A stretch of DNA of 64,000 nt, taken from positions 124,001 to 188,000 of IMG/VR virus record IMGVR_UViG_3300042261_002385; one strand, given 5' to 3'. Shown piece after piece: positions 1,957-56,285 of the stretch. Numbering within the stretch: position 1 is the first letter of the stretch; each line of letters opens with the position of its first letter. The translations under genes and the position numbers were made by a program. The notes beneath the pieces were generated by a model. That model was not told where the DNA came from. It saw only the letters and a list, made by a program, of their open reading frames with translations, and searched no databases.

Positions 1957-2421
1957 ATGAAAATAAAACGACTTATTAAATATTATCTTTTAGGTGAATC
2001 TCTAAAAGAAATAGAAATGAATAGAATTCTAGATAAAATATCAAAAAAAGTAAAACTTACTGACAGAGAAAAGGGATTCTTAGAACTTTATAATCTAACA
2101 GTAACTAAATCAGAAGATAAAGATTGGATGATGTTATCAAAAAGTGCAACCTCAACAAAGGTAAAAGAACTAATCGACTCAAATAGAAAAGTAATTTGTG
2201 ACTTACACGATAGAAATGGAAAAATAGGTCTTCAAATTATAAATGTTTTAGATAGCATAGAAGAAGAATTCTCAATTTTAGAACTCAAAGGTGAAGAAAA
2301 TCACAAATTACAGGATAAATTTCTTTACAATTTAATATATAGTGTAAAGAAAAATGAATATTCTCTACAAGAACACGATGAGTATTTCGAAAAATTAACC
2401 GTAGAAGGTGGTGAAAATTAA
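1957..2421 (+). CDS. Hypothetical protein with DUF6576-like helical hairpin
   Basis: 154 aa; MNRILDKISKKVKLTDREKGFL resembles the ILDKIS..LT..E..FL motif; basic N-terminus weakly resembling the CTS-like peptide. Confidence 0.55.
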   Translation: MKIKRLIKYYLLGESLKEIEMNRILDKISKKVKLTDREKGFLELYNLTVTKSEDKDWMMLSKSATSTKVKELIDSNRKVICDLHDRNGKIGLQIINVLDSIEEEFSILELKGEENHKLQDKFLYNLIYSVKKNEYSLQEHDEYFEKLTVEGGEN

Positions 2422-2725
2422 AAAGTATCAAAATTTTATCTCTGAAGAAATATCAGGAACCGAGTTAGTTGGTCCAGTAGGACCGGCGTATGGTGAAACG
2501 AGAACTCAGAACAAAACAGTAAATAAGTCTCACACATCTCTTGTTGGAGTAGAAGATAGAAATAATCCAAATTCTCAGAACAGTCTCACAAGTGATCTTT
2601 TCTTTGAAGATGATTACAATAAAATACATAATGATTATCTGAAATCCGGTGGAAATCAGAATCAACTTACAGGTAACAAACAAGATGATATAGCTATAAT
2701 GTTAGATTTTTTACAAGAAAACTAA
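2408..2725 (+). CDS. Putative internal head protein (CTS-like N-terminus)
   Basis: Starts MVKIKKYQNFISEE, like T4 capsid-targeting sequence MKTYQEFIAE. Confidence 0.55.
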   Translation: MVKIKKYQNFISEEISGTELVGPVGPAYGETRTQNKTVNKSHTSLVGVEDRNNPNSQNSLTSDLFFEDDYNKIHNDYLKSGGNQNQLTGNKQDDIAIMLDFLQEN

Positions 2726-2765
2726 CTTTTTATATATAATTTGATAAAAACAGAAATCAAAATTT

Positions 2766-4112
2766 ATGAGTAAATTAATTAAACTAAACACAAGTGAGGA
2801 TAAAGCCCTTTTAAACGATATCTTAAATGATGAGTTAATAGTAATTGAAGACATACAGGGTTCTAAAATCTGGATTAAATGGGATGGTCAAAATTTTGAA
2901 ATAAGACCAAAGTCAATAACGAATGAACCAATCAATTTAATCGATTTAGCAATGCAGAATTACTATAATCCTGTCACTAAATTCTTCTCAGAATTAGATG
3001 ATAGAGTTAAAAGTTTACTTAATCGTAAGTGGTGGTTTTGTTTTGAGTATTTTCCTGATGAACAACCGGCTAATATTGAATATTCTAGAGTTCCAAAGAA
3101 TCATTTAGTATTGAGTTCTATAAATAAAGGTGGTAAATTTGAATTTAATATTGAAGAACTTGATGAATACGCAAGATTATTTGATGTAGATTTGATTCCA
3201 GTTATTTATCAAGGTCAATTGACCGAGACTATGAAAGAAGCAATTATCTACTTTCTAAACACATCTGAAGAAGATTTAGAGTATGTTTTTGGTGATAAAT
3301 CATTTTCTTACTTTTTTTACAAAATATTGAATCCAATTTCTGAAAACTCATTTTTGATGGAAGAAGATTTTCAACAGAATTTAGAAAAATTAATAATTCG
3401 AAGTTCAAAAAGAGATATATCTTTCGAGTTACTGAATCCACTATACAAAAGAATGAATGACTCAAACACAACTGAGTTTGTTGAAATCTACACACTAATA
3501 CTAATTAATTTCTTAAATTTCTGTCAATCAGTGCAATTAGAAAGTGTGAAATTAAAAGGTGATACAAAAGAAGAGATGTATATTTACTTAATTTGCAAAT
3601 TATTCAATATTTATGTATCAGAAGTAAAAGAAGACCTACTTAATTTTGATTTTGTTGTTCCGGAATTTTTTGATAAAGAAAAATTTAAAATAAACACTGA
3701 GTTAATTAAAAATAAATTGACTAAAGATTATCTTAAAGAAGATGATAAACTTGAATACATCTTCAAAGTAATTTTAGGCTCATTTAACAAGAAAAGAAAA
3801 AAACCAATTGGTATCTTTACAGAAAATACCGTAAAACTATTTAATAAATTTGTTGATGATATTGAAGTCTATTTAGGTCGATATCTAAATAAAATTCAAG
3901 AAATTGAACTTGGAAGAGCTGGATTGTTAGACTTTGGTGATTTCTTTGACATTCAGTATGATACAGATGCAGAAGGTCAGGTTTATCCAGATGTTTATGA
4001 TGAGTTTGAAAAAGAAGAAGAAACTGGTAAAAAGAAAAAAGGTAAAGGTGGTAAATTTCCAGTAGGAGCTCCAACTAAAGAGGCACCATCTAAAGAAACA
4101 CCTACTAAGTAA
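2766..4112 (+). CDS. RNA ligase 2-like nucleotidyltransferase-fold protein, probably catalytically degenerate
   Basis: IEDIQGSKI (motif I position, Lys absent), FCFEYF, HLVLSSI, ARLFDVDLIPVIYQG, LEKLIIRS follow Rnl2-type motif order; acidic/basic C-tail. Confidence 0.5.
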   Translation: MSKLIKLNTSEDKALLNDILNDELIVIEDIQGSKIWIKWDGQNFEIRPKSITNEPINLIDLAMQNYYNPVTKFFSELDDRVKSLLNRKWWFCFEYFPDEQPANIEYSRVPKNHLVLSSINKGGKFEFNIEELDEYARLFDVDLIPVIYQGQLTETMKEAIIYFLNTSEEDLEYVFGDKSFSYFFYKILNPISENSFLMEEDFQQNLEKLIIRSSKRDISFELLNPLYKRMNDSNTTEFVEIYTLILINFLNFCQSVQLESVKLKGDTKEEMYIYLICKLFNIYVSEVKEDLLNFDFVVPEFFDKEKFKINTELIKNKLTKDYLKEDDKLEYIFKVILGSFNKKRKKPIGIFTENTVKLFNKFVDDIEVYLGRYLNKIQEIELGRAGLLDFGDFFDIQYDTDAEGQVYPDVYDEFEKEEETGKKKKGKGGKFPVGAPTKEAPSKETPTK

Positions 4113-4312
4113 TGAACTCAATAAATCTAAATATGACTTCACTAGAAGTTAAAGCAGAGTTAAGACCCTTAAAGTGCGAATGGACACGTGAAATGGCTAA
4201 AGATTTACAACATCATAGAGATGTGGATATGAGTTCCTTTGAACTGTTTATTGCAAAACAAATAAGAGCTAATAATCGCAAAAATTCAATCAAAAATATA
4301 TTTCTTAATTAA
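4112..4312 (+). CDS. Small protein containing a gp23-type major capsid protein segment
   Basis: VKAELRPLKCEWTREMAKDLQHHRDVD resembles gp23-family AKSRQLKAxWxxELAQDLxAxHGxD; ends NRKNSIKNIF. Confidence 0.6.
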   Translation: MNSINLNMTSLEVKAELRPLKCEWTREMAKDLQHHRDVDMSSFELFIAKQIRANNRKNSIKNIFLN

Positions 4313-4344
4313 AAACCATATCTTCTATTCCATATATAAATTAT

Positions 4345-5597: not shown

Positions 5598-6137
5598 GTG
5601 ATAGATTTAAACAGTCCTAGATTATCTTTTATTCTAATTTCATCTAATTCTTTAGATGATATGATGTCTATATTGTGGGCAAAAAACTACCAGATTATTC
5701 CTATCAAAGGATACTATAAAGGTCAGTATGAGGACTCTGCAATGGCTTTTGCTCCTGTTGATAATGATGAGCTAAGAAAGGAATTAATATTTTTATTAAA
5801 TCACTTTAAACAAGAATGTGGATTTATTAAATACTTTGGAGAAACTGACGTAACAAAAGTTTTTGCAGATGGTTCTGAAAAACCAATGGGTATAACTCTC
5901 TACAATACAGATGAAGAAAATATATCCTATCTTTATAACGGTATGAGTTTTTCATTTGTTGAAAAAGTAAGATATTGGAAACCTACAAAATTAGAAGATT
6001 TTAAAGTAGGAATGTTAGTTGAATATCTAAACAATAATAAGTGGTATCAGAAAAAAATTGAAGATCCAAAGAGTGACTGGGATAGTATGTTCAAGCTACT
6101 GACTAAATACGATAAAGTAAGAGTAGCTTCAATTTAA
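5598..6137 (+). CDS. Hypothetical protein
   Basis: 179 aa, GTG start 4 nt after TTTAATATATA (5583-5593). Confidence 0.6.
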   Translation: MIDLNSPRLSFILISSNSLDDMMSILWAKNYQIIPIKGYYKGQYEDSAMAFAPVDNDELRKELIFLLNHFKQECGFIKYFGETDVTKVFADGSEKPMGITLYNTDEENISYLYNGMSFSFVEKVRYWKPTKLEDFKVGMLVEYLNNNKWYQKKIEDPKSDWDSMFKLLTKYDKVRVASI

Positions 6138-6478
6138 TATTGTAGACTATCATATGTCTGTAGTAATCTCTGTGACAATTGTTCTTTTTGTTCTTCTGTG
6201 AGCTCCTGACTAAACTCATCTTCAAACCACTCAACTAACTGGTCAGCAACTACTTCTTCAGCCTCACCAGAACCGTGTTCATCATACCATTCTCTTTTAG
6301 TCTCGTATTCGTATCCGCCTCTACTAATTTCTTTGAGGTTTTCATCATCAACCCAGTTTTCGATTTCGTCATCTACTTTATTTTTAACATCATATTCAGG
6401 AAAATGGTGTTTTATCTTAGCCATCGTGAAATCAATGTCAAAGTCTCTAAAATTTTCATATTTTTTTAATACTCTCAT
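6134..6478 (-). CDS. Acidic putative internal head protein (CTS-like)
   Basis: Starts MRVLKKYENF; ATGA overlap with upstream gene. Confidence 0.6.
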   Translation of the reverse strand: MRVLKKYENFRDFDIDFTMAKIKHHFPEYDVKNKVDDEIENWVDDENLKEISRGGYEYETKREWYDEHGSGEAEEVVADQLVEWFEDEFSQELTEEQKEQLSQRLLQTYDSLQY

Positions 6479-7239
6479 AGTTGAAAAAAATCTTTTAATG
6501 ATTTAAGGAAATTATTTATTTGTTGAATCTCTTGTTCATTTCCTTCCTCTAATATATATTTAATAGTTTCATTTTCAGAAACATATTTATAAGCTCTTAA
6601 TTTGTCACCATATTCAAATTCACCAAGAGATTTACCGATATATCTTTCTAAGTCTTGTTGTAAACCCTCTGAAGTTTCCCATCTTTCGAATACATCTGAA
6701 TCATCTTCATCATTATAATCTAATTCTTCTAAATCTGTAGTATCTAAGATATCAATTGATTTTTTGACAGAATCACCGAATCCTTCTCTATATACCCAAC
6801 TGTCATCACACATGTCTAATATATCCTGAGCGGTTTTGTTAAGGTGATTGATTCGTCTTTCGGTTTTATCTTTAACAGTTGCCCAAAGAGAAGTAGTAAG
6901 GTCTTCAAATAAACCAAACATTGAATAGTCATCATCAGAGTCAATTCCAAATTGATTGTCATTGTAAAGTTTATTTTCATAATCTTTTACTAAGTCAAGT
7001 AACTCATCAAGACCACCTTCACCAGTCAATTTTGAATCTATGAAAGATTTCAAATCAGATTGAAAATCTTCACTATTAACAATTTTTGTATCATGATAGT
7101 AATGTTTTTCATGAACATCAATTACCTTATTAATAGCATTCTTACATCTACCAACAGCTACCAAAAAATCAAATTCTAAGTCTTCATTTTCTGAATTGGA
7201 TTTACCCCAGAATTCCTCATATAGTTTAATAGTTCTCAT
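6475..7239 (-). CDS. Acidic putative internal head protein (CTS-like)
   Basis: Starts MRTIKLYEEF; 254 aa, Asp/Glu-rich. Confidence 0.6.
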   Translation of the reverse strand: MRTIKLYEEFWGKSNSENEDLEFDFLVAVGRCKNAINKVIDVHEKHYYHDTKIVNSEDFQSDLKSFIDSKLTGEGGLDELLDLVKDYENKLYNDNQFGIDSDDDYSMFGLFEDLTTSLWATVKDKTERRINHLNKTAQDILDMCDDSWVYREGFGDSVKKSIDILDTTDLEELDYNDEDDSDVFERWETSEGLQQDLERYIGKSLGEFEYGDKLRAYKYVSENETIKYILEEGNEQEIQQINNFLKSLKDFFQL

Positions 7240-7242: not shown

Positions 7243-8247
7243 TTATTTTATTTTTAAATGTATATAAAGCCAAAATGATTCTGGTTTAACGCTAATCAAT
7301 ACTTTATTAGACCATTTTTTTGTCATTAACCAATTTGTAAAATTGTTTTTGATATTTTGATATTCACCTTCATCAAGTTTTCCATTATCCCAACGACCAA
7401 CTCCGTAGTATCCAAAAGTTATAACTCTATCTCTCAACATAGGAGTAAGTTTTTTTTCAAAATAACCAGGAGTAAAAGTCTTCATATCTAGTTTAATCTG
7501 ACCTATTGTCAAAATATCTAAATAATTTAGATTGACTATCTCTTTCTTTAAGGAAGAGGCCGATTTTGATTCTAAACTTAGAATCCATTTTACAACTGAT
7601 TGTGATAGTTTAAATTGACCAATTGGAAATCTCATATCATATTCAATACCATATTCAAACTGACCAGAACAATTTAGTCCAAAATATAAACCAAGTTCAT
7701 TCTTACCATAGTCTATTAAATGAGTATATCTATCTAAACTTCTAAATCTTGCAAATATTTGTCTAACGAATTCAGAATTTAAATTCTGAAAAGAATAATA
7801 AAGTAGAAAATCTTCAGGACATAAAGACCAGTTAGGATTTGATTCTTTCAGACCCAAAGCTGTAAGTGACTTTAAAAATGAATTAAAAATACCTTTACCA
7901 GCTACACTCACTTCAGATTGAACCTCAATTGATTCACCCAATAACTCAGTTGTATCAGTAGAAGGTGTGACTACAGGTTGTTTATCCTGTATACCATTTT
8001 GTAGATAGTTTTCTATTTGAAGTTTTATTTCAAGTTTTGCTCTATCGTCTAATAAATTTACCGCATTTACTAAATCAATTGTTGGATTAATATCCTCTCC
8101 ACCATATAGTTTATTATGATCATCAATATATCTATTTACAATATTCAATATATATTCATCTTCACAAAGTGATTCTATCCACTTACCAAAAGACTCGAAA
8201 TCTTCAACAGATTCGGAAATAAATTGTAAATATCTTTTTATCAACAT
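7243..8247 (-). CDS. Putative internal head protein (CTS-like)
   Basis: Starts MLIKRYLQFISES; late-type promoter at 8252-8262, 4 nt from ATG. Confidence 0.6.
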   Translation of the reverse strand: MLIKRYLQFISESVEDFESFGKWIESLCEDEYILNIVNRYIDDHNKLYGGEDINPTIDLVNAVNLLDDRAKLEIKLQIENYLQNGIQDKQPVVTPSTDTTELLGESIEVQSEVSVAGKGIFNSFLKSLTALGLKESNPNWSLCPEDFLLYYSFQNLNSEFVRQIFARFRSLDRYTHLIDYGKNELGLYFGLNCSGQFEYGIEYDMRFPIGQFKLSQSVVKWILSLESKSASSLKKEIVNLNYLDILTIGQIKLDMKTFTPGYFEKKLTPMLRDRVITFGYYGVGRWDNGKLDEGEYQNIKNNFTNWLMTKKWSNKVLISVKPESFWLYIHLKIK

Positions 8248-8261
8248 AGTCTATATATTAA

Positions 8262-14062: not shown

Positions 14063-14101
14063 GTAGTATATATTAATTTTTAATAATATAGTTAGTGACT
14101 A

Positions 14102-22486: not shown

Positions 22487-22906
22487 TTACTTAATCATTT
22501 TGACTATTTCGATAAAAGCCTTTTCTGTTCCTTTTATAACATATTCATACAAACCGAATGCATTATTTTTAGTTGGAACTTCATCGAAAAATTTAAGATT
22601 GTTTAAAATCTCATCTATATCATTTCTCCATTTTAGATAAAACTCATAAATATCAGCATCATTTATAAAACCTCTTACTTTAACATCTTTTGGATTCTTT
22701 GTATATGATTTCATAAATGAACTAAATTCACCACCTGACTCTTCAATTGTCTTTTCAATCATTGATTTAACTTCTTCAATAACCTCGGTGTATTTTGAAG
22801 AATCAGACGCATCAGTTTCTTCCGCGGTGGCTTGGCTTTCCTCTGGAACTTGAGCTTCGGTCTCATCCGCTTCTGTTAAAAATTGAACGTATTTTCTAAG
22901 TTTCAT
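22487..22906 (-). CDS. Putative internal head protein (CTS-like)
   Basis: Starts MKLRKYVQFLTEADE; ATTAATATATA at 22911-22921. Confidence 0.6.
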   Translation of the reverse strand: MKLRKYVQFLTEADETEAQVPEESQATAEETDASDSSKYTEVIEEVKSMIEKTIEESGGEFSSFMKSYTKNPKDVKVRGFINDADIYEFYLKWRNDIDEILNNLKFFDEVPTKNNAFGLYEYVIKGTEKAFIEIVKMIK

Positions 22907-34213: not shown

Positions 34214-34215
34214 AA

Positions 34216-34233
34216 TTTTAATATATATTAAAA
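34216..34233. promoter_or_regulatory. Palindromic bidirectional late-type promoter
   Basis: Perfect 18-bp palindrome ttttaatatatattaaaa in the 21-bp gap between two divergent start codons. Confidence 0.7.
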
Positions 34234-34234
34234 G

Positions 34235-39897: not shown

Positions 39898-40377
39898 TTA
39901 ATCTAGATATCTTACGTCTTTATGTGGGTCTTTAGATTGACCAGAATGTGTCCATAGTCTAGCAAATGGTGTAGTGAAAAAATTGTTATAAATTAATGTA
40001 TCATCTATATGTAGGTTTATTCCCATCTCTTTACAATATTCACCTTTGACTTTGTCCCAGTCTTCTGGATTAAATTTTCTTTGAACTGTGCCATCAGGAA
40101 ACTGAATTTTTCCAGTCTGTTCAGCTCCAATGCTTTTTAAATAGTCATATACTGAAAATTTGTGCGTCCATTTAATACCAAAGTCATTTAATTGTTTTTC
40201 AAATTCACTATCCCAACGACCACCTGTAATAATATGGACTTCACCTCCTGAGTTTACAAAAGATTGTGTAAGAAATGCGAAGAACTCTGGCATTCCATCA
40301 ATAACACCGTGAACATCAAGTCCAATTTTAAATTTAGAACCTAATTCTTCATTTACCATATTAGTAAATTTTTTCAT
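39898..40377 (-). CDS. HAD-superfamily phosphatase (nucleotidase-like)
   Basis: IGLDVHGVID (motif I, DxH variant), K..YC, LHIDD (motif IV); N-term MKKFTNMVNEE; TTTAATATATA at 40384-40394. Confidence 0.7.
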   Translation of the reverse strand: MKKFTNMVNEELGSKFKIGLDVHGVIDGMPEFFAFLTQSFVNSGGEVHIITGGRWDSEFEKQLNDFGIKWTHKFSVYDYLKSIGAEQTGKIQFPDGTVQRKFNPEDWDKVKGEYCKEMGINLHIDDTLIYNNFFTTPFARLWTHSGQSKDPHKDVRYLD

Positions 40378-43427: not shown

Positions 43428-43952
43428 ATGAGATATTTACAACTATTTGAAAACTTTGACGATAATAAGCCAGTAATCGATGCTCTTAAAACTATCCTAA
43501 GATGCATTAATAGTGGAAAAAAAATATCATCTGAAATAAATGGCGGTAAGTTAATGGACTTACACGATAAGTGTGAAGATCCGCAAGTGCAAGAATTTTT
43601 AGTGAAAGCAGCTGAAGTAGCAGGAGAAGAAATTCAAGGAACTATTATTGATTTAAATTTTGAATTTGATAAAAATGAATTAGAAGGTTTAATTAGAATA
43701 TTAGAGGCGAATCCAGAAAAAGATGAAGATTCTAATTTTAAAATCGAAAGATTTACAAAATTAACAAATGAGTCTTTACACAATTTTCATCATATATCCG
43801 AAGAAGAGTTAAATCTATTTTCTCAAGTTCCAGCCCTCGAAGAACTAATTACTAAAATGAAAGTTAGACTTGAAAAAGATGGTATACATTTCGATGAAAA
43901 CGATTTAGAGACTGTAGAAATTCTTAAGTCACAAGGAATAATCACTGAATAA
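43428..43952 (+). CDS. Putative internal head protein (CTS-like; start revised to 43428)
   Basis: MRYLQLFENF; second internal copy KIERFTKLTNES; ATTAATATATA at 43397-43407. Confidence 0.55.
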   Translation: MRYLQLFENFDDNKPVIDALKTILRCINSGKKISSEINGGKLMDLHDKCEDPQVQEFLVKAAEVAGEEIQGTIIDLNFEFDKNELEGLIRILEANPEKDEDSNFKIERFTKLTNESLHNFHHISEEELNLFSQVPALEELITKMKVRLEKDGIHFDENDLETVEILKSQGIITE

Positions 43953-48120: not shown

Positions 48121-48414
48121 ATGAAAATATTAAAATATGAATCTTTCTTAGAAACCATGCAGTTTGCAGCTCTTACAAATGCTCAGAGATTAGCTAAACA
48201 AGAAGCTGAAAGAAGAAAAGCTAAAAAAGAGGAAGAAGACTCTAAGAAGAATATTCCAGCAGAAGATAAGGATGATTCTAAATACATTAGTCATCATGAT
48301 GTTCAAATGGAAGGAGAAGAAGGCCAAACTCAAATGGAAGGAGAAGAAGGCCAAACTCAAATGGAAGGAGAAGAAGGCCAAACTCAAATGGAAGGAGAAG
48401 AACCAGAAAGATAA
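48121..48414 (+). CDS. Small acidic CTS-like protein with tandem repeat (start revised to 48121)
   Basis: MKILKYESFLE; TTTAATATATA at 48087-48097 lies inside the longer ORF call. Confidence 0.6.
   Translation: MKILKYESFLETMQFAALTNAQRLAKQEAERRKAKKEEEDSKKNIPAEDKDDSKYISHHDVQMEGEEGQTQMEGEEGQTQMEGEEGQTQMEGEEPER
48304..48402 (+). repeat. Perfect 27-bp tandem repeat, ~3.7 copies (QMEGEEGQT)
   Basis: caaatggaaggagaagaaggccaaact x3 plus 18 nt. Confidence 0.95.
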
Positions 48415-49893: not shown

Positions 49894-51960
49894 TTACATT
49901 TCATCGACCCAAGGTTTCTTACCTCTTCTATCTAATTTAGCTAATAATTCTTTCCACTCTTCCGGTTCAAATTTAATAGCATTTTCTTTTAAGAATGTTC
50001 CAATTTGTTTCTTAATATCCTCATTAGGTAGTTTAGTAGTGTGTCCCATCCAAGCAAATGCATCAACAAAACCACTTTTACAACCTCTATTCATTTGGTC
50101 ATTTATGATGTCCATTCTACCATATTCTGCAGCCCATTTGATTACGAAGTTTTTACCATTTTCCTCTTGTTTAACACCATACTTTAGAAGCATTTGATAC
50201 CCAGCAAAATAAGATTCACCAATCTCAGTTCTACTTTTCCAAGAACCTTTACAAACTTTTCTTATTGGTAAATTAGAATTGAAATTAGGATCGGCTCCTG
50301 CTTTCAGACAAAATTCTAAAGCGTCCTCATCACAAACTATATTATTGAACACATCACCAGTTAGAACTGCGTGATTTTGAACTAAAAGTTTTATCATTTC
50401 CATATTCTTAGCCTTAGCTATTGCTGAATCTGAACCTTTTTGAAGATTTGCAGTTCCACCTAAAGCGAATATCATTTTAACTCTTTCAATATCATCATCT
50501 TCTACAGCATTTATCAAAGCTTTTCCATTGTCTCTGTTAATATCAGCTCCGTACTCCTTAACATATCTTTGTAAATCCTCGGCTGTTATCTGTCTTTCTC
50601 TACCGGTCTCTGGGTCTGGAATTGTTTTTTTGATAATAAATTTCTCGGCTTCTTTTGCCTTTTTTCTTCGTTCAATTTCATCTTGACTAAGAGGCTGTAA
50701 AATGTCCCAAATACTATCACTTATTCCATACTCACTTTCCCATTGTCTTAAAAGAGATTTAAACTCACCACCAATATAACTGTTATTTACAGTCTGACAA
50801 GCACCATTTGAATAAGTTCTATCAGGTTTGATAGTAACTCCAAGAGTCCACCTACTATTTGTGGATGATAAGTTAAAATTATAAATATAATATTGAATGT
50901 TATACTCACCAAGATAGCTATTCCAGTAGCTTTCAGAATTTACAATACAGTGAGAACAGTGAGCATTTAACATTTTATTAGCAGCATATGAATTTACTTC
51001 AACTACCATAATACCAGATTCATTATAAAGAACTTTACAACCTTTTACACCAAGTAAATCATTAACTTTATTTATCTTTTCTACTCTATCTGAATAACCT
51101 TCAGAGCCAGATGCATCTAAGTGTTGTTTAGCGGCTCTAATAAATTCAACAAGTGGATTATCCATTGTAGTGAATCTAAATAAACGGCTTCTCCATACTA
51201 ATTTACCAAAATTAGGATTTGGTTTTCCATCTCTTGTAGTTTCATATCTATCTTCTAACATCTCACCAAAGAAAGTTTTCCAAACGATTTCTTTCTTTTC
51301 TTCTGGTTCGATACTTTCAAAACCATTAGCAATCTCCACAAGCTGTTCCATTTGAAGTTCAGTAGCAGCATTAGCAGCTTTCTTTAACTTTGGAGGAAGA
51401 GTATCAACAATCTTTTTAACTTTTCTATACTCACCCAATTTATCTAACTCATCAGAGAGAATTTCAGCATTTGTATGATTGTTCGAAGGATTCGGAATTG
51501 ATTCATCTATAAAGTTGATATCAAACTTCTTAGGTAGTTTATCTAAAAGGTCTTTATATTCAATTAGAAGTGCATAAAGTCTTTCAACTTCTTCGTAAGA
51601 AATATTCTCAACAAAATACATATAAACAAAGTTATAAAGATATCCAATGTTTGGTTGAAACAACTCTCTTAGTTTAACAAACTCTTCATTTCTTTCAAGA
51701 TTTCTTACTTGTTCATCTGTAAGTCTAACATCTCTCATTTTCATTCTGATTTCGTTATACTGTTCAGGTGAGAAATCTCCTTTAGAAAGACCTCTCTTTT
51801 CACCGTGTCTAAGTTTATAATCTAATTCGGAATCGATTAATTTTAAATCTGTAGCCAATTTTTTAATAATAAATTGGTCTTTCAAAAACTTTTTAGACTT
51901 ATCTAAATTTTCATTTAGAGGTTCTAAATTCCTAAATTGATTATATCTAAATAATTTCAT
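49894..51960 (-). CDS. Ankyrin-repeat protein with CTS-like N-terminus
   Basis: C-terminal GADINRDNGKALINAVE, GADPNFNSNLPIRKV, IKWAAEYGRMDII; starts MKLFRYNQF...LNE. Confidence 0.7.
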   Translation of the reverse strand: MKLFRYNQFRNLEPLNENLDKSKKFLKDQFIIKKLATDLKLIDSELDYKLRHGEKRGLSKGDFSPEQYNEIRMKMRDVRLTDEQVRNLERNEEFVKLRELFQPNIGYLYNFVYMYFVENISYEEVERLYALLIEYKDLLDKLPKKFDINFIDESIPNPSNNHTNAEILSDELDKLGEYRKVKKIVDTLPPKLKKAANAATELQMEQLVEIANGFESIEPEEKKEIVWKTFFGEMLEDRYETTRDGKPNPNFGKLVWRSRLFRFTTMDNPLVEFIRAAKQHLDASGSEGYSDRVEKINKVNDLLGVKGCKVLYNESGIMVVEVNSYAANKMLNAHCSHCIVNSESYWNSYLGEYNIQYYIYNFNLSSTNSRWTLGVTIKPDRTYSNGACQTVNNSYIGGEFKSLLRQWESEYGISDSIWDILQPLSQDEIERRKKAKEAEKFIIKKTIPDPETGRERQITAEDLQRYVKEYGADINRDNGKALINAVEDDDIERVKMIFALGGTANLQKGSDSAIAKAKNMEMIKLLVQNHAVLTGDVFNNIVCDEDALEFCLKAGADPNFNSNLPIRKVCKGSWKSRTEIGESYFAGYQMLLKYGVKQEENGKNFVIKWAAEYGRMDIINDQMNRGCKSGFVDAFAWMGHTTKLPNEDIKKQIGTFLKENAIKFEPEEWKELLAKLDRRGKKPWVDEM

Positions 51961-51962: not shown

Positions 51963-53651
51963 CTATCTTCTTATGTGTAATTTTTCAAATATTCTTTTTA
52001 GTTCCATATCCCAAACTTTCTTGGATTCTCCTTTGAGATATTTATTTTTTAATTCAGCAGCTAATTCATAATTCTCTTCTTCAACTGCGTTTTCAATTTC
52101 TTGTTGAATTTCACTAATCGTCATCTCATCATAAGACTTTTTCTGAACAGGTTGTTCCTCATCTTTATTTTGTAAAGACTGTCTAACAAGTCTATCTACA
52201 TCAGATTCTTCTTCAGACTCTGTTTGAGTTTGTTTCCATCTTTGCTCATCTTCAATTTCTTTTTGTTGTCTTTCCCACTCTTCAATTTCTCTTTTGTAAT
52301 CTTCAATATCATCAACAATATATTTGATAATCTTTTGAATTTCTGATTTAGCGTGTGAGGAACTAAATCTTTCTTGATTAATTACAAAACGACCACCTTG
52401 TAAGTCAAAACTTGAAAATATGCTATTCATAATTTCTAAGAATTGTTCATCAGTTCTACAAACATCTGCTCTTTTCTTCAAATATTCTTTAAACTCAGGT
52501 GATGATTTTTCAGCTTCTGAATATGCTCTTTCTTTATCATAAGCTAAAATTGTGAAAACTCTTGTTTCTAATCTTTTATATTGATTAGACTCTGGAAACA
52601 TATTTACGAATGTCAGTAACATTTCAAGTGCAGGTGGACCATATCTAAAATCCTGAGCTTCATCTTTAAAAGAAGAAGTAGCTTTTTTAATAATTTTAGC
52701 AGTTTCTTTATCCTTTTTGACAGCTCCTGATTGTAAAAATAAGTATATGCCTTTAATAGTTTCATGAATCAACATTGGAAAATCAATACCAGCTGCTTTA
52801 ATTACAATTTTAGTAGCTTCTTTTTCCAATAACATTGACATTTCATAATAGTTACCAGATTGACTTTCCCAGATTACTTGACAAGCACCTGCCATACCCT
52901 GAGGCATATTTTTCATCATCTCTGACTTTCTATTGATTGGAATAACCCAGTCCATTTTATCAGCTAAGTCAGACATTCTAACCCAACAATCTAAAATTTG
53001 TTTTCCTCTATTTCCAAAAATATTTTGTAATTCAGTCTCAACCGTTTCAGAAAATCTTATGATATCTTTAGTTGCTTTACCAGCAGCTTGAGTAATCATA
53101 TTTAAAATCTTTTTCTTTTCAATTGCTGCAACTAAATTCGTTCCAGGAGTCTGTTCTCCTTCTTCTTGAGTCTGTTCTGCTTGTTGTCTTCTATTTTCTT
53201 CATCTCTTTCATCCTGTTCTTCTTGTTGCTCAGGAGTAGGTTGTTGAGATTGTTGAGGCACTTGTCTAACATCAGATATCTCAGAAGAAACCTGACCTTG
53301 TGGAACTAATTTTATTTGTAATTCAATAGGCTTTATAGATGTCTGTAGAATTTCATCAAACTCTTCTCTAACGACTGTCTCTGCTAAAACCTCTAAACTT
53401 CTAATTCTAGCTGACATTTGTTCAGGATTAAGTTGCCGACCATCTTGAGATGTCATCAATATTTGATTAGATTGTCTCATATTCTGGTCAAACTCTGGCC
53501 AAATTCTTGGCATTTGACCTCTTTCATCATCAGGACTAACACCCAATGCTCTTCTGGCTTGTTCTTCAGATTTAGCCATAAAATCCGATGGAACACCTTT
53601 ATTACCTTCTAAATCAACTTCTTCATTTATAAATTTATCAAATGATTTCAT
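51963..53651 (-). CDS. Putative internal head protein (CTS-like), helical, Gln/Glu-rich
   Basis: Starts MKSFDKFINEE; C-term UVR-like IENAVEEENYELAAELK. Confidence 0.6.
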   Translation of the reverse strand: MKSFDKFINEEVDLEGNKGVPSDFMAKSEEQARRALGVSPDDERGQMPRIWPEFDQNMRQSNQILMTSQDGRQLNPEQMSARIRSLEVLAETVVREEFDEILQTSIKPIELQIKLVPQGQVSSEISDVRQVPQQSQQPTPEQQEEQDERDEENRRQQAEQTQEEGEQTPGTNLVAAIEKKKILNMITQAAGKATKDIIRFSETVETELQNIFGNRGKQILDCWVRMSDLADKMDWVIPINRKSEMMKNMPQGMAGACQVIWESQSGNYYEMSMLLEKEATKIVIKAAGIDFPMLIHETIKGIYLFLQSGAVKKDKETAKIIKKATSSFKDEAQDFRYGPPALEMLLTFVNMFPESNQYKRLETRVFTILAYDKERAYSEAEKSSPEFKEYLKKRADVCRTDEQFLEIMNSIFSSFDLQGGRFVINQERFSSSHAKSEIQKIIKYIVDDIEDYKREIEEWERQQKEIEDEQRWKQTQTESEEESDVDRLVRQSLQNKDEEQPVQKKSYDEMTISEIQQEIENAVEEENYELAAELKNKYLKGESKKVWDMELKRIFEKLHIRR

Positions 53652-53659: not shown

Positions 53660-54031
53660 TTATTTTTCAAAATAAGAATCAATCTTTTCTTTTTCTTCTT
53701 TAGAAACTTCTGTGTAGATTCTCTCAAATCTATCCATCACTTCTTTTGCTGCGGCTAATGGAGCATCTTCTTCAGATGGAATTTCTGTTGGGGTAATTCC
53801 TGGACGAGTTGGTCTTGGAATTGTAGTTGGAGCCGGAGTTGTAGTCGGAGATGGTTTTGTCTCTGTTCCAGCCAACGGAGCATCTTCTTCTGACGGAATT
53901 TCTGTTGGTGTGATTCCTGGACGAGTTGGTCTTGGAATTGTAGTTGGAGCCGGAGTCGTAGTTGGAGATGGTTTTGTTTCCGTCATCACAAACTCTTCGA
54001 CAAATCTCTGATATTTTTTGATATAACCCAT
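53660..54031 (-). CDS. Pro/Thr-rich CTS-like protein with internal duplication
   Basis: Starts MGYIKKYQRFVEE; TTTAATATATA at 54051-54061. Confidence 0.65.
   Translation of the reverse strand: MGYIKKYQRFVEEFVMTETKPSPTTTPAPTTIPRPTRPGITPTEIPSEEDAPLAGTETKPSPTTTPAPTTIPRPTRPGITPTEIPSEEDAPLAAAKEVMDRFERIYTEVSKEEKEKIDSYFEK
53760..53983 (-). repeat. 117-bp-period tandem duplication (TETKPSPTTTPAPTTIPRPTRPGITPTEIPSEEDAPLA x2)
   Basis: Copies begin at 53760 and 53877; peptide identical, about 8 nucleotide differences, all silent. Confidence 0.92.
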
Positions 54032-54139: not shown

Positions 54140-54718
54140 ATGAAAAGATTTTCAGAATTACAAAAGAAATCAAAAGTTAGAAGAATTTTCGAAGCAGAAG
54201 AAGGAGCAAATCTTCCATCTAACTACAAAGATATGTCAAAAGAAGAACTTATAAAATTGATGTCAGGTCAAGCTGGTAAAGAAGAAGATAATGAAAAAGA
54301 AGATGAAAAAGAAGACAAACAAGAATCATCAAAAGAAGGTGGTGATGTGGTAAAATTCTTTTCTAAATTATTCGAAAGTAGAGAAATGGCTCACATATAT
54401 CACTTAACGGTAAAAGGTGAGATGGGTTCACACGCAGCTCACTTAGCACTAAATGAATACTATGATGGAATTCTTGGTTTTATTGATGAAATGATTGAAG
54501 TTTATCAAGGTCAATATGGTATAATTGAGGGTTATGAAACAATTGATACTTCGGAGACTCAAAGTAAAGATAAAATTGATTATTTTGAAGAACTTGTTAA
54601 ACAAATCAGAGAAGATAGAAAATCAATCAATAGCGAAGATACTCATATTCATAATATCGTTGATGAAGCAATTGCTTTAATGTATAAAACACTATATAAG
54701 TTAAAATATAACAAATAA
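54140..54718 (+). CDS. DUF5856-type ferritin-like protein with N-terminal extension
   Basis: AHIYHL...SHAAHLALNEYYDGI..FIDEMIEVYQGQYG four-helix pattern; starts MKRFSEL. Confidence 0.68.
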   Translation: MKRFSELQKKSKVRRIFEAEEGANLPSNYKDMSKEELIKLMSGQAGKEEDNEKEDEKEDKQESSKEGGDVVKFFSKLFESREMAHIYHLTVKGEMGSHAAHLALNEYYDGILGFIDEMIEVYQGQYGIIEGYETIDTSETQSKDKIDYFEELVKQIREDRKSINSEDTHIHNIVDEAIALMYKTLYKLKYNK

Positions 54719-54722
54719 AAAT

Positions 54723-55031: not shown

Positions 55032-55227
55032 TTTTGTAGATTTTATTTATAGAACTTTTTCTTCTTAAAGGTCTTTCGAAAATACCTAACTTTCTGAGTA
55101 TTTCTAAGTCTATTTCTTTTGCTACTTGCTCAGATAAAATTTTAGTAAGTTCAGATTCTATGTCTCTTGTAGAAGTAGAAACAGTATTATTACTATCAAC
55201 CACACCTTTGACTTTATACTTTTTCAC
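55021..55227 (-). CDS. Small protein containing the spine-helix segment of a gp23-type major capsid protein
   Basis: DIESELTKILSEQVAKEIDLEILRKL resembles gp23-family DAEAELxxILSxxIxxEIxREIL; ends RRKSSINKIY. Confidence 0.65.
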   Translation of the reverse strand: MKKYKVKGVVDSNNTVSTSTRDIESELTKILSEQVAKEIDLEILRKLGIFERPLRRKSSINKIYKNVC

Positions 55228-55250
55228 TAATTATTTTAGTATTAGATAAG

Positions 55251-55568
55251 TTATTTGTTTTCAGTATAAAGATACTTTCTACCTTCATCATTATAACTAT
55301 TCATGTTTTGTAGAAAAGTATCTAATTTATCTTGTGTATCGTCTAAATTTTTTTTAATTACTTGAAGAGCAAAAATTGAATCATCTATCTGATCATTACC
55401 TTTTTGAGAATCACTTACATAATTATTTAACTCACTTGTTAAAGACTCAATAGTTTTAGTCTTATCTTTGATAGAATCCGATATTTCAGTAATCTCTTTT
55501 ACAATTTCTTCAATTCTGTCAGGTGATATATCAACCTCTTCAGTCTCATAAAATCTTTTAATTCTCAT
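55251..55568 (-). CDS. Coiled-coil CTS-like protein (start revised to 55568)
   Basis: MRIKRFYETEE; palindromic promoter at 55583-55604. Confidence 0.6.
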   Translation of the reverse strand: MRIKRFYETEEVDISPDRIEEIVKEITEISDSIKDKTKTIESLTSELNNYVSDSQKGNDQIDDSIFALQVIKKNLDDTQDKLDTFLQNMNSYNDEGRKYLYTENK

Positions 55569-55582
55569 AGAAAGTGTTTTAA

Positions 55583-55604
55583 AATTTAATATATATATTA
55601 AATT
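55583..55604. promoter_or_regulatory. Palindromic bidirectional late-type promoter
   Basis: Perfect 22-bp palindrome aatttaatatatatattaaatt between divergent genes. Confidence 0.7.
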
Positions 55605-56285
55605 ATGAAACGTAGAAATAAACATCTAATACTAGAGTTCACCGAATTCAATCTTCAGCGTTTTAATCCTGACTCAGCTAGAGCATCAGTTCATGTTGAC
55701 GATCCTAAATTGAGTATCGATGCATTTGATAAACATCAAGATGCAATTAGAGCAGCGATGTCAAGAATCACTGATATCTTAATGAATGTTAAGGGAACAA
55801 CTGCTTACTCACAACTGAGAAGTAAACTAGCTCTCGAAAAACAAGATATTCAAAATTTAAAAATTCAGAAAATTGTTAAGAACGGTATTAAATATGATTG
55901 TTACGTTGTAGTCACTATTGATGATGAAGATTATTGGGGCGTAGTTGAAGATATTTTAGGTCAAAATACAGAATTTACTTCAGAATTGTTTAAAGATATG
56001 GACCTTTATCAACCAATAGAATGGACTATTAAAATTAAAGGTCTTGTAATCAAAACAATTAAAGAGTGGTTGAAACCAGAACCCGGAAATTATAGATTAT
56101 TAAATAATGAAGTAATTTGCTATTCACAAGAGACAGGAAAACTCTTAAAAATGGAACAGGGAATTGAAATAGAGTTGATAAGAGCCTATGACGAAAAACT
56201 ACTTATTCGTTATGAGTCGAATGTTTATAGTTTAGTAAATGATAATTATATCTATTTTAATTGGTGGTTTGAAAAAATAGATTAA
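55605..56285 (+). CDS. Hypothetical protein (CTS-like variant HLILEFTEF)
   Basis: 226 aa ORF starting immediately after the palindrome. Confidence 0.55.
   Translation: MKRRNKHLILEFTEFNLQRFNPDSARASVHVDDPKLSIDAFDKHQDAIRAAMSRITDILMNVKGTTAYSQLRSKLALEKQDIQNLKIQKIVKNGIKYDCYVVVTIDDEDYWGVVEDILGQNTEFTSELFKDMDLYQPIEWTIKIKGLVIKTIKEWLKPEPGNYRLLNNEVICYSQETGKLLKMEQGIEIELIRAYDEKLLIRYESNVYSLVNDNYIYFNWWFEKID

What the first reader, a model, noticed from the sequence alone, without database searches (positions are those of the whole stretch)
1957..55625. About 18 unrelated genes share a T4 capsid-targeting-sequence-like N-terminus: a very large packaged-cargo programme
Seen: MVKIKKYQNFISEE (2408), MRVLKKYENF (6478), MRTIKLYEEF (7239), MLIKRYLQFISES (8247), MKLRKYVQFLTE (22906), MKYLKLYENFME (34213), MKLKRYLQFIKES (34235), MKKFTNMVNEE (40377), MRYLQLFENF (43428), MKILKYESFLE (48121), MKLFRYNQF..LNE (51960), MKSFDKFINEE (53651), MGYIKKYQRFVEE (54031), MKRFSEL (54140), MRIKRFYE (55568); weaker at 1957, 30755, 36166 and 55605. 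Established: T4 internal proteins IPII/IPIII begin MKTYQEFIAE, which directs packaging into the prohead, with cleavage after Glu by gp21; T4 uses it for only a few proteins. Most of these genes follow the late-type promoter or lie in operons headed by it. Inference: this phage loads dozens of different proteins into its head for injection.
Basis: partly seen in the sequence, partly recalled or inferred. Interest (0 to 1): 0.76.

Follow-up and report, generated by a model that had tools for sequence, protein, structure and literature searches.

The report
Head-loading tags on huge-phage proteins
About one gene in ten of this 436-kb uncultivated phage starts with the same short peptide, which closely resembles the tag that phage T4 uses to load proteins into its head, so the tag probably lists the proteins this giant virus delivers together with its DNA.

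Summary
The window lies in a 436-kb phage of the Mahaphage group (31% GC, probably a Bacteroidota host). About 48 of its ~528 genes start with M-(K/R)-x-(I/L)-(K/R)-(K/R/L)-[YF]-x-x-F-(I/L/V)-x-E. Eleven clear cases and three borderline ones are in the window. Shuffled N-termini give 0.3 matches. Codon use shows that selection acts on the amino acids, not the DNA. Beyond the tag the proteins are unrelated, apart from one four-member paralogue family.

The core [YF]xxF[ILVM]xE is the T4 capsid-targeting sequence (YQEFIAE). It is 25- to 50-fold enriched at N-termini in this phage and in three other huge phages. It is absent from the equally AT-rich jumbo phages PTm1 and pT24.

The genome has a T4-type portal, a T4-type capsid protein and a gp21-type protease with the catalytic His and Ser. 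Tagged genes sit in operons headed by the promoter that drives virion genes, never behind host-type promoters.

The cultured relative PAU has its own tag on 19 proteins. These include four of the five that its depositors call "internal capsid protein", plus the scaffold.

The best explanation is a greatly expanded T4-type head-loading system. Packaging and cleavage in this phage are inferred, not shown.

The parts
2408..2725 (+). Tagged gene, 105 aa, GTG start. Tag MVKIKKYQNFISEE occupies codons 1-14 (2408-2449).
   Evidence: 22.9 bits and T4-type core YQNFISE. The LR745206 orthologue starts MIKKFYQFINE and is then identical through ISGTELVGPVGPAYG.
6134..6478 (-). Tagged gene, 114 aa. Tag MRVLKKYENF. 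First of three consecutive tagged genes.
   Evidence: 16.7 bits. The orthologue in LR745206 is tagged. No Pfam or PHROG family.
6475..7239 (-). Tagged gene, 254 aa. Tag MRTIKLYEEF.
   Evidence: 18.3 bits. No family.
7243..8247 (-). Tagged gene, 334 aa. Tag MLIKRYLQFISES. ATATATA promoter motif 5 nt upstream.
   Evidence: 22.7 bits and T4-type core. Orthologue tagged. Promoter seen.
22487..22906 (-). Tagged gene, 139 aa, very acidic. Tag MKLRKYVQFLTEA. Lies inside the tail-fibre/structural operon.
   Evidence: 19.1 bits and T4-type core. Orthologue starts MIKKYLQFIKEADE. Neighbouring genes are collagen-like tail fibres.
33350..34213 (-). Tagged gene, 287 aa. Tag MKYLKLYENFMEGE. Weak P-loop kinase-like match.
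   Evidence: 23.1 bits. Pfam CPT 20 bits, below the family cut-off.
34214..34234 (.). 21-nt intergenic palindrome containing TTTTAATATATATTAAAA, which places an ATATATA promoter motif upstream of both divergent tagged genes.
   Evidence: Read directly. Motif statistics.
34235..35596 (+). Tagged gene, 453 aa. Tag MKLKRYLQFIKES. Best-scoring tag in the window.
   Evidence: 26.3 bits. In its deep family, 64 of 81 full-length cluster representatives start with the T4-type core. The tag is followed by a variable 5-17 aa linker and then a conserved domain.
39898..40377 (-). Borderline tag, 159 aa, MKKFTNMVNEE. HAD-like motif follows.
   Evidence: 9.6 bits, in the T4 register with Met in place of Phe.
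43428..43952 (+). Tagged gene, 174 aa. Tag MRYLQLFENF.
   Evidence: 16.3 bits.
48121..48414 (+). Borderline tag, 97 aa, MKILKYESFLE. The start is an internal ATG of the ORF that begins at 48079.
   Evidence: 5.0 bits. ATATATA motif upstream.
49894..51960 (-). Tagged gene, 688 aa. Tag MKLFRYNQF. Probably an ankyrin-repeat protein.
   Evidence: 21.6 bits. ESM Atlas nearest clusters are all ankyrin, score 0.98. No Pfam hit at E <= 0.01.
51963..53651 (-). Tagged gene, 562 aa. Tag MKSFDKFINEE, in the same register as T4 MKTYQEFIAE. UVR motif near the C-terminus.
   Evidence: 14.0 bits with the aromatic at residue 4, and T4-type core FDKFINE. The orthologue starts MKNFKDFMNEE. Pfam UVR.
53660..54031 (-). 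Tagged gene, 123 aa. Tag MGYIKKYQRFVEE.
   Evidence: 20.2 bits and T4-type core. The orthologue starts MRFLKKFEKFNEE.
54140..54718 (+). Borderline tag, 192 aa, MKRFSELQKK.
   Evidence: 8.9 bits.

Best explanation
The shared N-terminus is a capsid-targeting sequence of the T4 type. It is a roughly 13-residue amphipathic segment, M-(K/R)-x-(I/L)-(K/R)-(K/R/L)-[YF]-x-x-F-(I/L/V)-x-E, placed in front of otherwise unrelated proteins.

Inferred mechanism: during head assembly the tag binds the scaffolding core, which here is the C-terminal part of the 699-aa protease-scaffold protein. The tagged protein is thereby enclosed as the gp23-type shell forms. The gp21-type serine protease then cuts after the Glu of the (I/L/V)-x-E site, releasing the tag and leaving the cargo in the head, from which it leaves with the DNA at infection.

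In this phage and its huge-phage relatives the system has grown from the handful of tagged proteins in T4 to about 50 genes, or 9-11% of the gene set.

Shown here: the tag, its amino-acid-level selection, its conservation across the clade, its resemblance to the T4 tag, the T4-type head module with an apparently active protease, and the association with the virion-gene promoter.

Inferred: binding to the core, packaging, cleavage and injection.
For: 1. The tag is real and selected as protein. 45 N-termini match against 0.27 in shuffles, and cross-validation holds. Synonymous codon use in the tags equals that in gene bodies. The same-codon fraction for identical residues is 0.586 observed against 0.586 expected.

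2. It is attached to unrelated proteins and added in front of complete domains, for example ahead of the racemase-like IGVFDSGYGG and the HAD-like FDFDDTL motifs.

3. It resembles the T4 tag. The T4 CTS is MKTYQEFIAE. The T4-derived pattern [YF]xxF[ILVM]xE at residues 3-9 gives 17 hits against 0.66 expected here, 14/0.41 in LR745206, 21/0.40 in LR756501 and 19/0.44 in LR756500. It gives 3 in T4 (IPII, IPIII, gp61.1) and 0-1 in Lak, PTm1, PAU and pT24. A core matrix trained only on this phage ranks IPIII and IPII second and third of 236 T4 N-termini.

4. The head machinery is T4-type. Portal: PF07230, 200 bits. Capsid protein: PF07068, 102 bits. The protease domain matches T4 gp21 by hhalign at 96.8% probability, E = 2.6e-10, with invariant His and Ser at the T4 His85 and Ser140 columns. 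[ILM]xE is conserved in the capsid-protein propeptides of all relatives. PAU's capsid protein is cut from 585 to 520 residues by N-terminal sequencing, which falls at its L-M-E site give or take one residue.

5. Expression class. 42/48 tagged genes lie in ATATATA-headed units against 247/480 untagged (p = 6e-7). 0/48 lie in TAnnTTTG-headed units against 97/480 (p = 5e-5). ATATATA precedes 8 of 9 recognisable virion genes.

6. Conservation. All 79 hits in 1.5 Mb of related loci fall on first ATGs. 11 of 21 orthologues in LR745206 keep a scoring tag and most others keep a degenerate one. 64 of 81 members of one deep family keep the tag at 26-50% overall identity, followed by a variable linker.

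7. Cultured relative PAU. It has a lineage-specific tag, MKT(L/I)xx(L/M)(Y/F)E..LNE, on 19 proteins. These include 4 of the 5 annotated 'internal capsid protein' and the 'scaffolding' protein (Fisher p = 4e-6). Two of them lie far from the head genes.

8. Negative controls. PTm1 and pT24 are 29-30% GC phages of Flavobacteriia and lack the tag.
Against: There are no virion proteomics, N-terminal sequences or expression data for this uncultivated phage.

Only 23 of 48 tags have Glu at +6, and only 15 have the full (L/I/V/M)-x-E directly after the Phe. Cleavage of the MKYLKLFEEF-type tags is therefore unclear.

The matrix gives the T4 tags only 6-8 bits, so the resemblance could be convergence rather than homology.

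The cargo is slightly acidic (median pI 5.1) rather than basic like the T4 internal proteins.

Some tagged proteins look like ordinary cytoplasmic enzymes: a GATase, and racemase-like, HAD-like and NUDIX-like proteins. These are unusual for injected cargo.

The ATATATA promoter also precedes primase, UvsX, gp47 and NrdA, so late timing is not established.

The basis of the PAU depositors' notes is not stated. One annotated internal protein (gp70) and the two 'mango' internal vertex proteins lack the tag.
Confidence: 0.7

Rival explanations
1. The tag is a recognition peptide for something other than the prohead core. It could be a shared docking helix for a phage chaperone, an assembly or replication compartment, or a timed-degradation signal, so that tagged proteins act in the infected cell and are not packaged.
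For: The tag is a short amphipathic helix that could bind many partners. Several tagged proteins look like cytoplasmic enzymes. Half of the tags lack the Glu at the T4 position. Tagged genes are scattered across the genome rather than clustered with the head genes (adjacent pairs 7 against 4.3 expected, p = 0.12).
Against: The core pattern is that of the one short tag with a known function in a phage that has the same head machinery. In PAU, the proteins annotated as internal to the capsid are the tagged ones. The scaffold protein itself carries the tag in PAU. No tagged gene sits behind a host-type promoter.
Confidence: 0.17
2. The tag is an amphipathic helix that works after delivery or synthesis by attaching proteins to the membrane or to DNA. 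It has no role in head assembly.
For: The hydrophobic face (I/L at -3, Y/F at 0, F at +3, I at +4) and the Lys-rich face are typical of in-plane membrane anchors (read from the sequences).
Against: This does not explain the conserved Glu and the (I/L/V)-x-E protease-type site. It does not explain the lineage-specific variants that track the head-gene phylogeny, or the PAU annotations. A variable linker after the tag fits a removable module.
Confidence: 0.07
3. The pattern is a nucleotide-level or translation-level signal. AT-rich first codons might be needed for initiation on leaderless or Shine-Dalgarno-less mRNAs of a Bacteroidota host, or the pattern might be part of the promoter or initially transcribed region that lies only 4-7 nt upstream.
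For: Promoter motifs end 4-7 nt before many start codons. The tag residues (K, I, L, Y, F, N, E) all have AT-rich codons.
Against: Shuffling the same N-terminal residues abolishes the signal (45 against 0.27). Synonymous codon choice in the tags equals that in gene bodies. Same-codon sharing equals expectation (0.586 against 0.586). 21 of 48 tagged genes have no promoter motif directly upstream. K/R, Y/F and I/L exchanges are the ones tolerated. Two other AT-rich jumbo phages of Flavobacteriia (PTm1, pT24) lack the tag.
Confidence: 0.02
4. The shared N-termini are remnants of one duplicated gene family, or of a mobile 5' cassette (promoter plus first codons) spread by recombination.
For: One true paralogue family of four exists. 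T4-type phages are known, from general knowledge, to shuffle genes at conserved flanks. Some relatives carry tandem arrays of tagged genes.
Against: With the first 16 residues removed, 44 of 48 tagged proteins show no BLASTP similarity to each other. Median nucleotide identity over the first 36 nt is 47%, with no excess of shared codons. The tags persist in orthologues at 26-50% identity.
Confidence: 0.02

Closest known systems
Phage T4 capsid targeting sequence (CTS) of internal proteins IPII and IPIII (MKTYQEFIAE), cleaved by the prohead protease gp21
   Same: It is a short N-terminal peptide on otherwise unrelated proteins. It has the same core, aromatic-x-x-Phe-(I/L/V)-x-Glu, a few residues after the initiator Met. 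The phage has a T4-type portal, a T4-type capsid protein with a similar propeptide, and a gp21-type protease with conserved catalytic His and Ser.
   Different: About 50 genes carry the tag, against 2-3 with this exact tag in T4. The tag is 2-3 residues longer, with an extra basic turn (K-x-[IL]-K-K) before the aromatic. Half of the tags lack the Glu at the T4 position. The cargo is mostly acidic and up to 688 aa, rather than small and basic. The protease is fused to a roughly 550-aa extension, presumably the scaffold. Function has not been tested here.
Internal capsid proteins and scaffold of Sphingomonas (Sphingobacterium) phage PAU, GenBank JQ362498
   Same: PAU is a jumbo phage with a gp23-type capsid protein (25% identity to ours) and the same protease family. 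Nineteen of its proteins share an N-terminal tag of the same build: MK, a hydrophobic residue at position 4, an aromatic followed by Glu, then L-N-E. Four of its five 'internal capsid protein' entries and its 'scaffolding' entry carry the tag.
   Different: The sequence differs (MKTLSKLYEAKLNEA): there is no Phe at +3, so the matrix built here does not detect it. Most PAU tagged genes sit in the head module, whereas here they are spread over the genome. I found no published description of the PAU tag.
Ejection/inner-body proteins of phiKZ-like giant phages such as SPN3US
   Same: Dozens of different proteins are loaded into a very large head and processed by a T4-related prohead protease (PMC5694885).
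   Different: In those phages the propeptides are long (around 80-130 residues) and are not one shared short motif, and cleavage follows an A/S/G-x-E-type site. Here there is a single roughly 13-residue consensus tag.
Sec, Tat and lipoprotein signal peptides
   Same: They are N-terminal, start with Met-Lys, and are removable.
   Different: The tag has no hydrophobic core stretch, no twin arginine and no lipobox. It is charged and amphipathic (read from the sequences).

Membership tests
T4-type capsid targeting sequence / internal-protein system | A short (about 10-20 aa) N-terminal sequence shared by proteins that are otherwise unrelated | tested here: met
   About 48 genes carry it. 44 show no similarity to each other once the first 16 residues are removed.
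T4-type capsid targeting sequence / internal-protein system | Sequence resemblance to the T4 CTS MKTYQEFIAE | tested here: met
   [YF]xxF[ILVM]xE at residues 3-9 occurs 17 times against 0.66 expected. A matrix trained here ranks T4 IPIII and IPII second and third of 236 T4 N-termini. The absolute score is only 6-8 bits, so common descent as opposed to convergence is not settled.
T4-type capsid targeting sequence / internal-protein system | The tag ends in the gp21 cleavage motif (L/I)-x-E | tested here: inconclusive
   15 of 48 have [LIVM]-x-E directly after the Phe, and 23 of 48 have Glu at +6. 31 of 48 have some [LIV]xE within 20 residues, against 148/480 untagged. In the relative LR756500 the site is nearly universal.
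T4-type capsid targeting sequence / internal-protein system | The phage encodes a gp21-type (S77) prohead serine protease within a T4-type head gene module | tested here: met
   Pfam S77 gives 20-22 bits, below the family cut-off. phmmer with T4 gp21 gives E = 0.0013. hhalign of a diverse alignment against T4 gp21 gives 96.8% probability and E = 2.6e-10, with invariant His72 and Ser127 in the columns of T4 His85 and Ser140. The gene lies directly upstream of the gp23-type capsid gene and near the gp20-type portal.
T4-type capsid targeting sequence / internal-protein system | Tagged proteins are present inside the virion | not testable with these tools
   There are no proteomics for this phage. 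Indirect support: in PAU, 4 of 5 annotated internal capsid proteins and the scaffold carry that lineage's tag.
T4-type capsid targeting sequence / internal-protein system | The tag alone is sufficient to package a foreign protein, and is removed by the protease | not testable with these tools
   This needs tag-reporter fusions and N-terminal mapping.
T4-type capsid targeting sequence / internal-protein system | Expression together with the head genes | tested here: inconclusive
   Promoter-motif association is strong: 42/48 against 247/480, and 0/48 behind the host-type motif. However, the timing of the ATATATA promoter is inferred, and it also precedes 4 of 10 replication genes.
phiKZ/SPN3US-type ejection-protein propeptides | Long N-terminal propeptides (roughly 80-130 residues) without one shared short consensus | tested here: not met
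   Here the conserved part is about 13 residues. It is followed at once by a variable linker and then the conserved domain. The comparison is.
Mahaphage clade of huge phages (Al-Shayeb et al. 2020) | Capsid protein clusters with the 634-735 kb genomes and the Lak phages, with Bacteroidetes hosts | tested here: met
   The capsid protein is 69-70% identical to those of LR756502 and LR745206, 51% to LR756501 and 29% to Lak. The clade and host statement come from PMC7162821. Host-type TAnnTTTG promoter motifs are present. No tree was built.

The most novel reading that the evidence does not exclude
The tag is a lineage-coded packaging address. Each branch of this group of T4-headed jumbo and huge phages has its own version: this clade, LR756501, LR756500, PAU and Lak. 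Each version co-evolves with that branch's scaffold. The tag therefore gives a sequence-readable list of the cargo. By this reading, the largest known phages pre-load about 50 different proteins, or 10% of their gene set, including enzymes, a lysozyme and ankyrin-repeat proteins. That amounts to a ready-made starter proteome delivered with the DNA, far beyond anything known for T4.
Probability: 0.45. Interest if true: 0.85.

Novelty: new variant of a known kind. Interest (0 to 1): 0.78.

Why it matters
Huge phages of the Mahaphage group are known only from metagenomes, and most of their genes have no assigned function.

If the tag is a head-loading address, a simple N-terminal pattern predicts from sequence alone which roughly 50 proteins per genome travel inside the virion. 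Those proteins act first in the infected cell. That set is the natural place to look for anti-defence factors, host-takeover enzymes and cell-wall-opening proteins.

It would also show that the short T4 targeting tag is ancient or repeatedly reinvented, that it diversifies by lineage, and that it can scale from a few proteins to a tenth of a proteome.

It also offers new, possibly mutually independent tags for loading foreign proteins into phage capsids. The cultivable phage PAU provides a system in which the idea can be tested directly.

Tried and rejected
- Pfam and PHROG scans of about 40 tagged proteins. Most have no family, and a few have weak enzyme matches. The cargo cannot be named from these.
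- PHROG scan of the large window genes. Only the collagen-like tail fibres are recognised.
- The full 12-column matrix on T4. IPII and IPIII score only 5.9 bits and IPI scores negative. Only the core matrix and the neutral pattern show the link.
- hmmsearch of the shallow protease alignment against PDB sequences found nothing relevant. hhalign with a more diverse alignment did.
No fold evidence was obtained for the protease or for the tags.
- The ESM Atlas gave no lead for the 453-aa protein.
- Clustering of tagged genes along the genome is not significant (7 adjacent pairs against 4.3 expected, p = 0.12).
- T4 gp55 (late sigma), gp22, gp67, gp68 and the internal proteins have no phmmer-detectable homologue in the genome.
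- Explanations rejected: a DNA cassette, a translation signal, a paralogue family, or an N-terminal composition artefact (and the controls).
- Literature searches for a prior description of such tags in huge phages or PAU found none in the held library. Subscription journals are not covered.

Full report
**Where the window lies.** The window is bases 124,001-188,000 of a single 436,265-bp virus record. The record is 31.5% GC and estimated 95% complete. The genome carries a T4-type portal (PF07230, 200 bits) and a gp23-type major capsid protein (PF07068, 102 bits). It also carries T4-like replication, recombination and packaging genes: gp41, gp43, gp44, gp46, gp47, gp32, gp61, UvsX, UvsW, NrdA, gp17, gp18, gp4, gp13 and gp25. 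Its capsid protein is 69-70% identical to those of the 642-kb and 634-kb metagenomic phages LR756502 and LR745206. It is 51% identical to that of the 735-kb genome, 34% to LR756500, 29% to the Lak phages, and 25-31% to the cultured jumbo phages pT24, MA9V, PAU and PTm1. The 634-735-kb genomes and the Lak phages are the Mahaphage clade, predicted to infect Bacteroidetes (PMC7162821). No Shine-Dalgarno sequences are visible upstream of the genes. A TAnnTTTG motif, which from general knowledge is the Bacteroidota -7 promoter element, is enriched upstream of genes. Both observations fit that host.

**The observation.** I built a 12-column position matrix from the genome's own N-termini, anchored on the aromatic residue. 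With it, 45 of about 528 genes score >=12 bits, against 4 of 115,217 internal windows. Training on one half of the genome and testing on the other finds 14/285 and 18/241 N-termini, against 0/855 and 3/931 internal Met positions. Shuffling residues 2-16 within every N-terminus keeps the N-terminal composition, yet gives a mean of 0.27 hits and a maximum of 2. A six-frame scan of every ATG, GTG and TTG in the genome returns 52 hits, almost all at the first ATG of a long ORF.

The consensus is M-(K/R)-x-(I/L)-(K/R)-(K/R/L)-[YF]-(E/N)-(E/Q/N)-F-(I/..)-x-E. Phe at +3 is found in 43 of 45 tags and Glu at +6 in 23 of 45. The aromatic sits at residue 5-8. About ten further genes in the genome have degenerate tags such as MKYLKLFEDN and MKYIKLFEEW.

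**Protein-level, not DNA-level.** Synonymous codon use inside the tags equals that of gene bodies: TTT 0.75 against 0.75, TAT 0.76 against 0.75, AAA 0.82 against 0.83. Among tag columns, pairs of genes with the same residue share the same codon in 58.6% of cases, against 58.6% expected from codon usage. Median nucleotide identity of the first 36 nt is 47%. Twenty-one of 48 tagged genes have no promoter motif immediately upstream. With the first 16 residues removed, only one family of four paralogues remains, and the other 44 proteins are unrelated by BLASTP. This rules out a promoter or translation signal, a mobile 5' cassette and a gene family.

**Not a general property of AT-rich Bacteroidota phages.** PTm1 and pT24 infect Tenacibaculum and are 29-30% GC. 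They give 3 and 0 weak matrix hits, and 1 and 0 hits to the T4-derived pattern.

**Clade-wide conservation.** In 80 related loci from IMG/VR (1.5 Mb, capsid protein 67-90% identical), all 79 matrix hits are first ATGs of ORFs of >=50 aa. These include orthologous genes next to the capsid gene. The first 400 kb of LR745206 holds 29 hits, 28 of them first ATGs. LR756501 holds 12, with consensus MIKKFxxFINE. LR756500 holds 18, with consensus MKYIKEYEEF(I/L)xE, several of them in tandem. Of 21 reciprocal-best orthologue pairs with LR745206 in which our protein is tagged, 11 partners score >=10 bits and most others keep a recognisable degenerate tag.

The 453-aa window protein (34235-35596) belongs to a family with 137 cluster representatives. 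Of the 81 that are full-length, 64 begin with [YFW]xx[FYLW][ILVM]xE within ten residues, even at 26-35% overall identity. The tag (consensus M-I/K-K-K-Y/W-L-Q-F-I-K-E-S) is followed by a poorly conserved linker of 5-17 residues and then a conserved W-x-L-S..D-I domain start. Conservation of the pattern columns is partly by selection. The 64/81 count and the linker result are not. This is the anatomy of a separate N-terminal module.

**Resemblance to the T4 tag.** The T4 capsid targeting sequence is MKTYQEFIAE. It is cut off once by gp21, and any protein fused to it is packaged. I read IPII and IPIII from the T4 record and both start with exactly this sequence. IPI starts MKTFKEF. A pattern taken from T4 rather than from this phage, [YF]xxF[ILVM]xE starting at residues 3-9, gives the following counts:

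| Genome | Observed | Expected |
|---|---|---|
| This phage | 17 | 0.66 |
| LR745206 | 14 | 0.41 |
| LR756501 | 21 | 0.40 |
| LR756500 | 19 | 0.44 |
| T4 (IPII, IPIII, gp61.1) | 3 | 0.30 |
| Lak, PTm1, PAU, pT24 | 0-1 | - |

Conversely, the core of the matrix trained only on this phage ranks T4 gp61.1, IPIII and IPII as the top three of 236 T4 N-termini. The absolute scores are low (6-8 bits), so I cannot separate common descent from convergence on the same binding and cleavage requirements.

The 699-aa ORF directly upstream of the capsid gene (genome 269,288-271,387, minus strand) has a weak S77 match and a weak phmmer match to T4 gp21. I aligned its N-terminal domain with those of close and distant relatives, including the PTm1 gene annotated as prohead core scaffolding protein and protease and the pT24 gene annotated as prohead core scaffold. 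This alignment matches T4 gp21 by hhalign with 96.8% probability and E = 2.6e-10. The invariant His72 and Ser127 fall in the columns of T4 His85 and Ser140, which from memory are the catalytic pair. The remaining roughly 550 residues are presumably the scaffold.

The capsid protein has a T4-like N-terminal propeptide (KKWSPVLE against T4 NKWKPLLE). An [ILM]-x-E site is conserved in the propeptides of all relatives. In PAU the capsid protein is cut from 585 to 520 residues according to N-terminal sequencing (PMC5646251). That places the cut at its L62-M63-E64 site, give or take one residue. T4-like cleavage specificity in this group is therefore plausible.

**Expression class.** The octamer AATATATA is 44-fold enriched in the 30 nt upstream of genes. 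ATATATA ends either 4-8 nt or about 17-27 nt before the start codon. It precedes 8 of 9 recognisable virion or packaging genes, but also 4 of 10 replication or recombination genes. It is therefore a phage-specific promoter class that includes the virion genes, and not strictly "late". Counting operons, 42 of 48 tagged genes lie in ATATATA-headed units against 247 of 480 untagged (odds ratio 6.6, p = 6e-7). None lies in a TAnnTTTG-headed unit, against 97 of 480 (p = 5e-5). None of the T4-core replication or structural proteins carries the tag.

**Independent support from a cultured relative.** A motif-blind test counted pairs of proteins whose residues 2-13 score >=28 in BLOSUM62. It gives 377 pairs here against 3-6 for internal segments. 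Unexpectedly, it gives 105 against 0 in phage PAU and 43 against 3 in Lak-A1. PAU has its own tag, MK(T/S)(L/I)xx(L/M)(Y/F)E(A/S)KLNE(A/S), on 19 proteins, all at first ATGs. Fourteen of them lie in the head-gene region.

I read the whole GenBank record. Five of these six carry the tag, against 14 of about 288 other genes (p = 4e-6). gp199 and gp270 lie 30 and 85 kb from the capsid gene, so the notes were not assigned by position. If they had been assigned from the motif, all 19 would carry them. Their basis is nevertheless not stated, and gp70 and the two "mango" internal vertex proteins lack the tag.

Aligned on the aromatic residue, the three tags share an aromatic followed four residues later by (I/L)-x-E:

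- PAU: Y-E-A-K-L-N-E
- This phage: Y-x-x-F-I-x-E
- T4: Y-Q-E-F-I-A-E

Lak has MNKxIKxL(L/I/V/M)ESLFDD on at least six proteins, again with an L-x-E.

**What the cargo is.** It is mostly unknown, since the majority of tagged proteins have no Pfam or PHROG family. The exceptions are:

- a GH108 lysozyme domain (62 bits);
- a class-I glutamine amidotransferase domain;
- weak racemase-, HAD-, NUDIX- and nucleotidyltransferase-like matches;
- a probable ankyrin-repeat protein, the 688-aa window gene.

In the enzyme-like cases the tag precedes the normal start of the domain. Tagged proteins total 11,378 residues and have a median length of 192 aa. They are slightly more acidic than the rest (pI 5.1 against 5.5, p = 0.04). 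Their orthologues in LR745206 are less similar than those of untagged genes (about 50% against 61% identity).

**Verdict.** The best explanation is a T4-type capsid-targeting and propeptide system expanded to about a tenth of the gene set. Lineage-specific versions occur across a group of T4-headed jumbo and huge phages. The tag, its selection, its distribution and the head machinery are shown. Binding to the core, packaging, cleavage and injection are inferred by analogy with T4 and from the PAU annotations. I put this at about 0.7. The main alternative (about 0.17) is a shared docking or regulatory peptide that has nothing to do with packaging. I found no prior description of these tags in the held literature.

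Noticed in passing
window 34214-34234: The start codons of two divergent tagged genes are only 21 nt apart. The gap is a palindrome (TTTTAATATATATTAAAA) that places an ATATATA promoter motif 7-8 nt upstream of each ATG, so it looks like a bidirectional promoter.
   Followed up: partly
whole genome; e.g. window 8248-8267, 22907-22926, 14063-14082: The ATATATA promoter-like motif ends either 4-8 nt or about 17-27 nt before the start codon, a bimodal spacing. The short class implies leaderless or nearly leaderless mRNAs. TAnnTTTG motifs also end 3-5 nt before several ATGs, for example upstream of window genes 37397-38035, 30960-32159 and 41842-42441.
   Followed up: partly
L026 (T4 record) 18966-19130, minus strand: T4 gp61.1, a 54-aa hypothetical protein, starts MKTFKEFIKED. 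Among 236 T4 ORFs it is the best match to the tag matrix, ahead of IPIII and IPII. It may be an unrecognised CTS-bearing protein of T4.
   Followed up: no
PAU record JQ362498, e.g. L237 1249-2697, 7052-9181, 11720-14736: The cultured jumbo phage PAU has its own N-terminal tag, MKT(L/I)xx(L/M)(Y/F)E..LNE, on 19 proteins. These include the scaffold and 4 of the 5 annotated internal capsid proteins. I found no published mention.
   Followed up: yes
Lak-A1 record MK250016, first 400 kb (L217-L236): At least six Lak proteins of 232-387 aa start MNKxIKxL(L/I/V/M)E(S/N/Y)LFDD. This may be a third version of the tag. A separate group starting MKVQIRxGVFETNSSSTH looks like an ordinary paralogue family.
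   Followed up: partly
LR756500 record, L197 11706-17016: Six consecutive genes all start MKYI(K/F)(E/G/K)YEEF(I/L)xE. Only some are paralogous beyond the tag. The array recalls the variable internal-protein loci of T-even phages.
   Followed up: partly
window 14102-18479, minus strand: Two collagen-like tail-fibre genes (909 and 543 aa) lie in a stretch of 36-40% GC, against about 30% elsewhere.
   Followed up: no
genome 271,565-274,710 (L017 13565-16710), plus strand: A block of four opposite-strand genes is inserted between the portal gene and the protease-scaffold gene. It includes a full RNase R/RNase II-type exoribonuclease (RNB domain, 378 bits), and it splits the T4-type head module.
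   Followed up: no
window 38091-38162, minus strand: A tRNA-Cys (GCA) gene.
   Followed up: no
window 55251-55568, minus strand: The N-terminus MRIKRFYETEE fails the tag matrix. It is conserved in the LR745206 orthologue (MKIKRLYENDE) and resembles the PAU-type (L/F)-Y-E form. It may be a variant tag.
   Followed up: no
window 188-1764, plus strand: The mechanical ORFs here have GTG/TTG starts and odd, low-complexity hydrophobic translations. They are probably not genes. The real coding strand or frame of this stretch was not examined.
   Followed up: no
genome 363,684-364,694 (L022 15684-16694), plus strand: A tagged protein (MISRYNEFLLEKEF) carries a GH108 lysozyme domain (62 bits). If it is packaged, it would be a head-borne cell-wall hydrolase, as is known for the T7 internal core protein gp16 (from general knowledge).
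   Followed up: no
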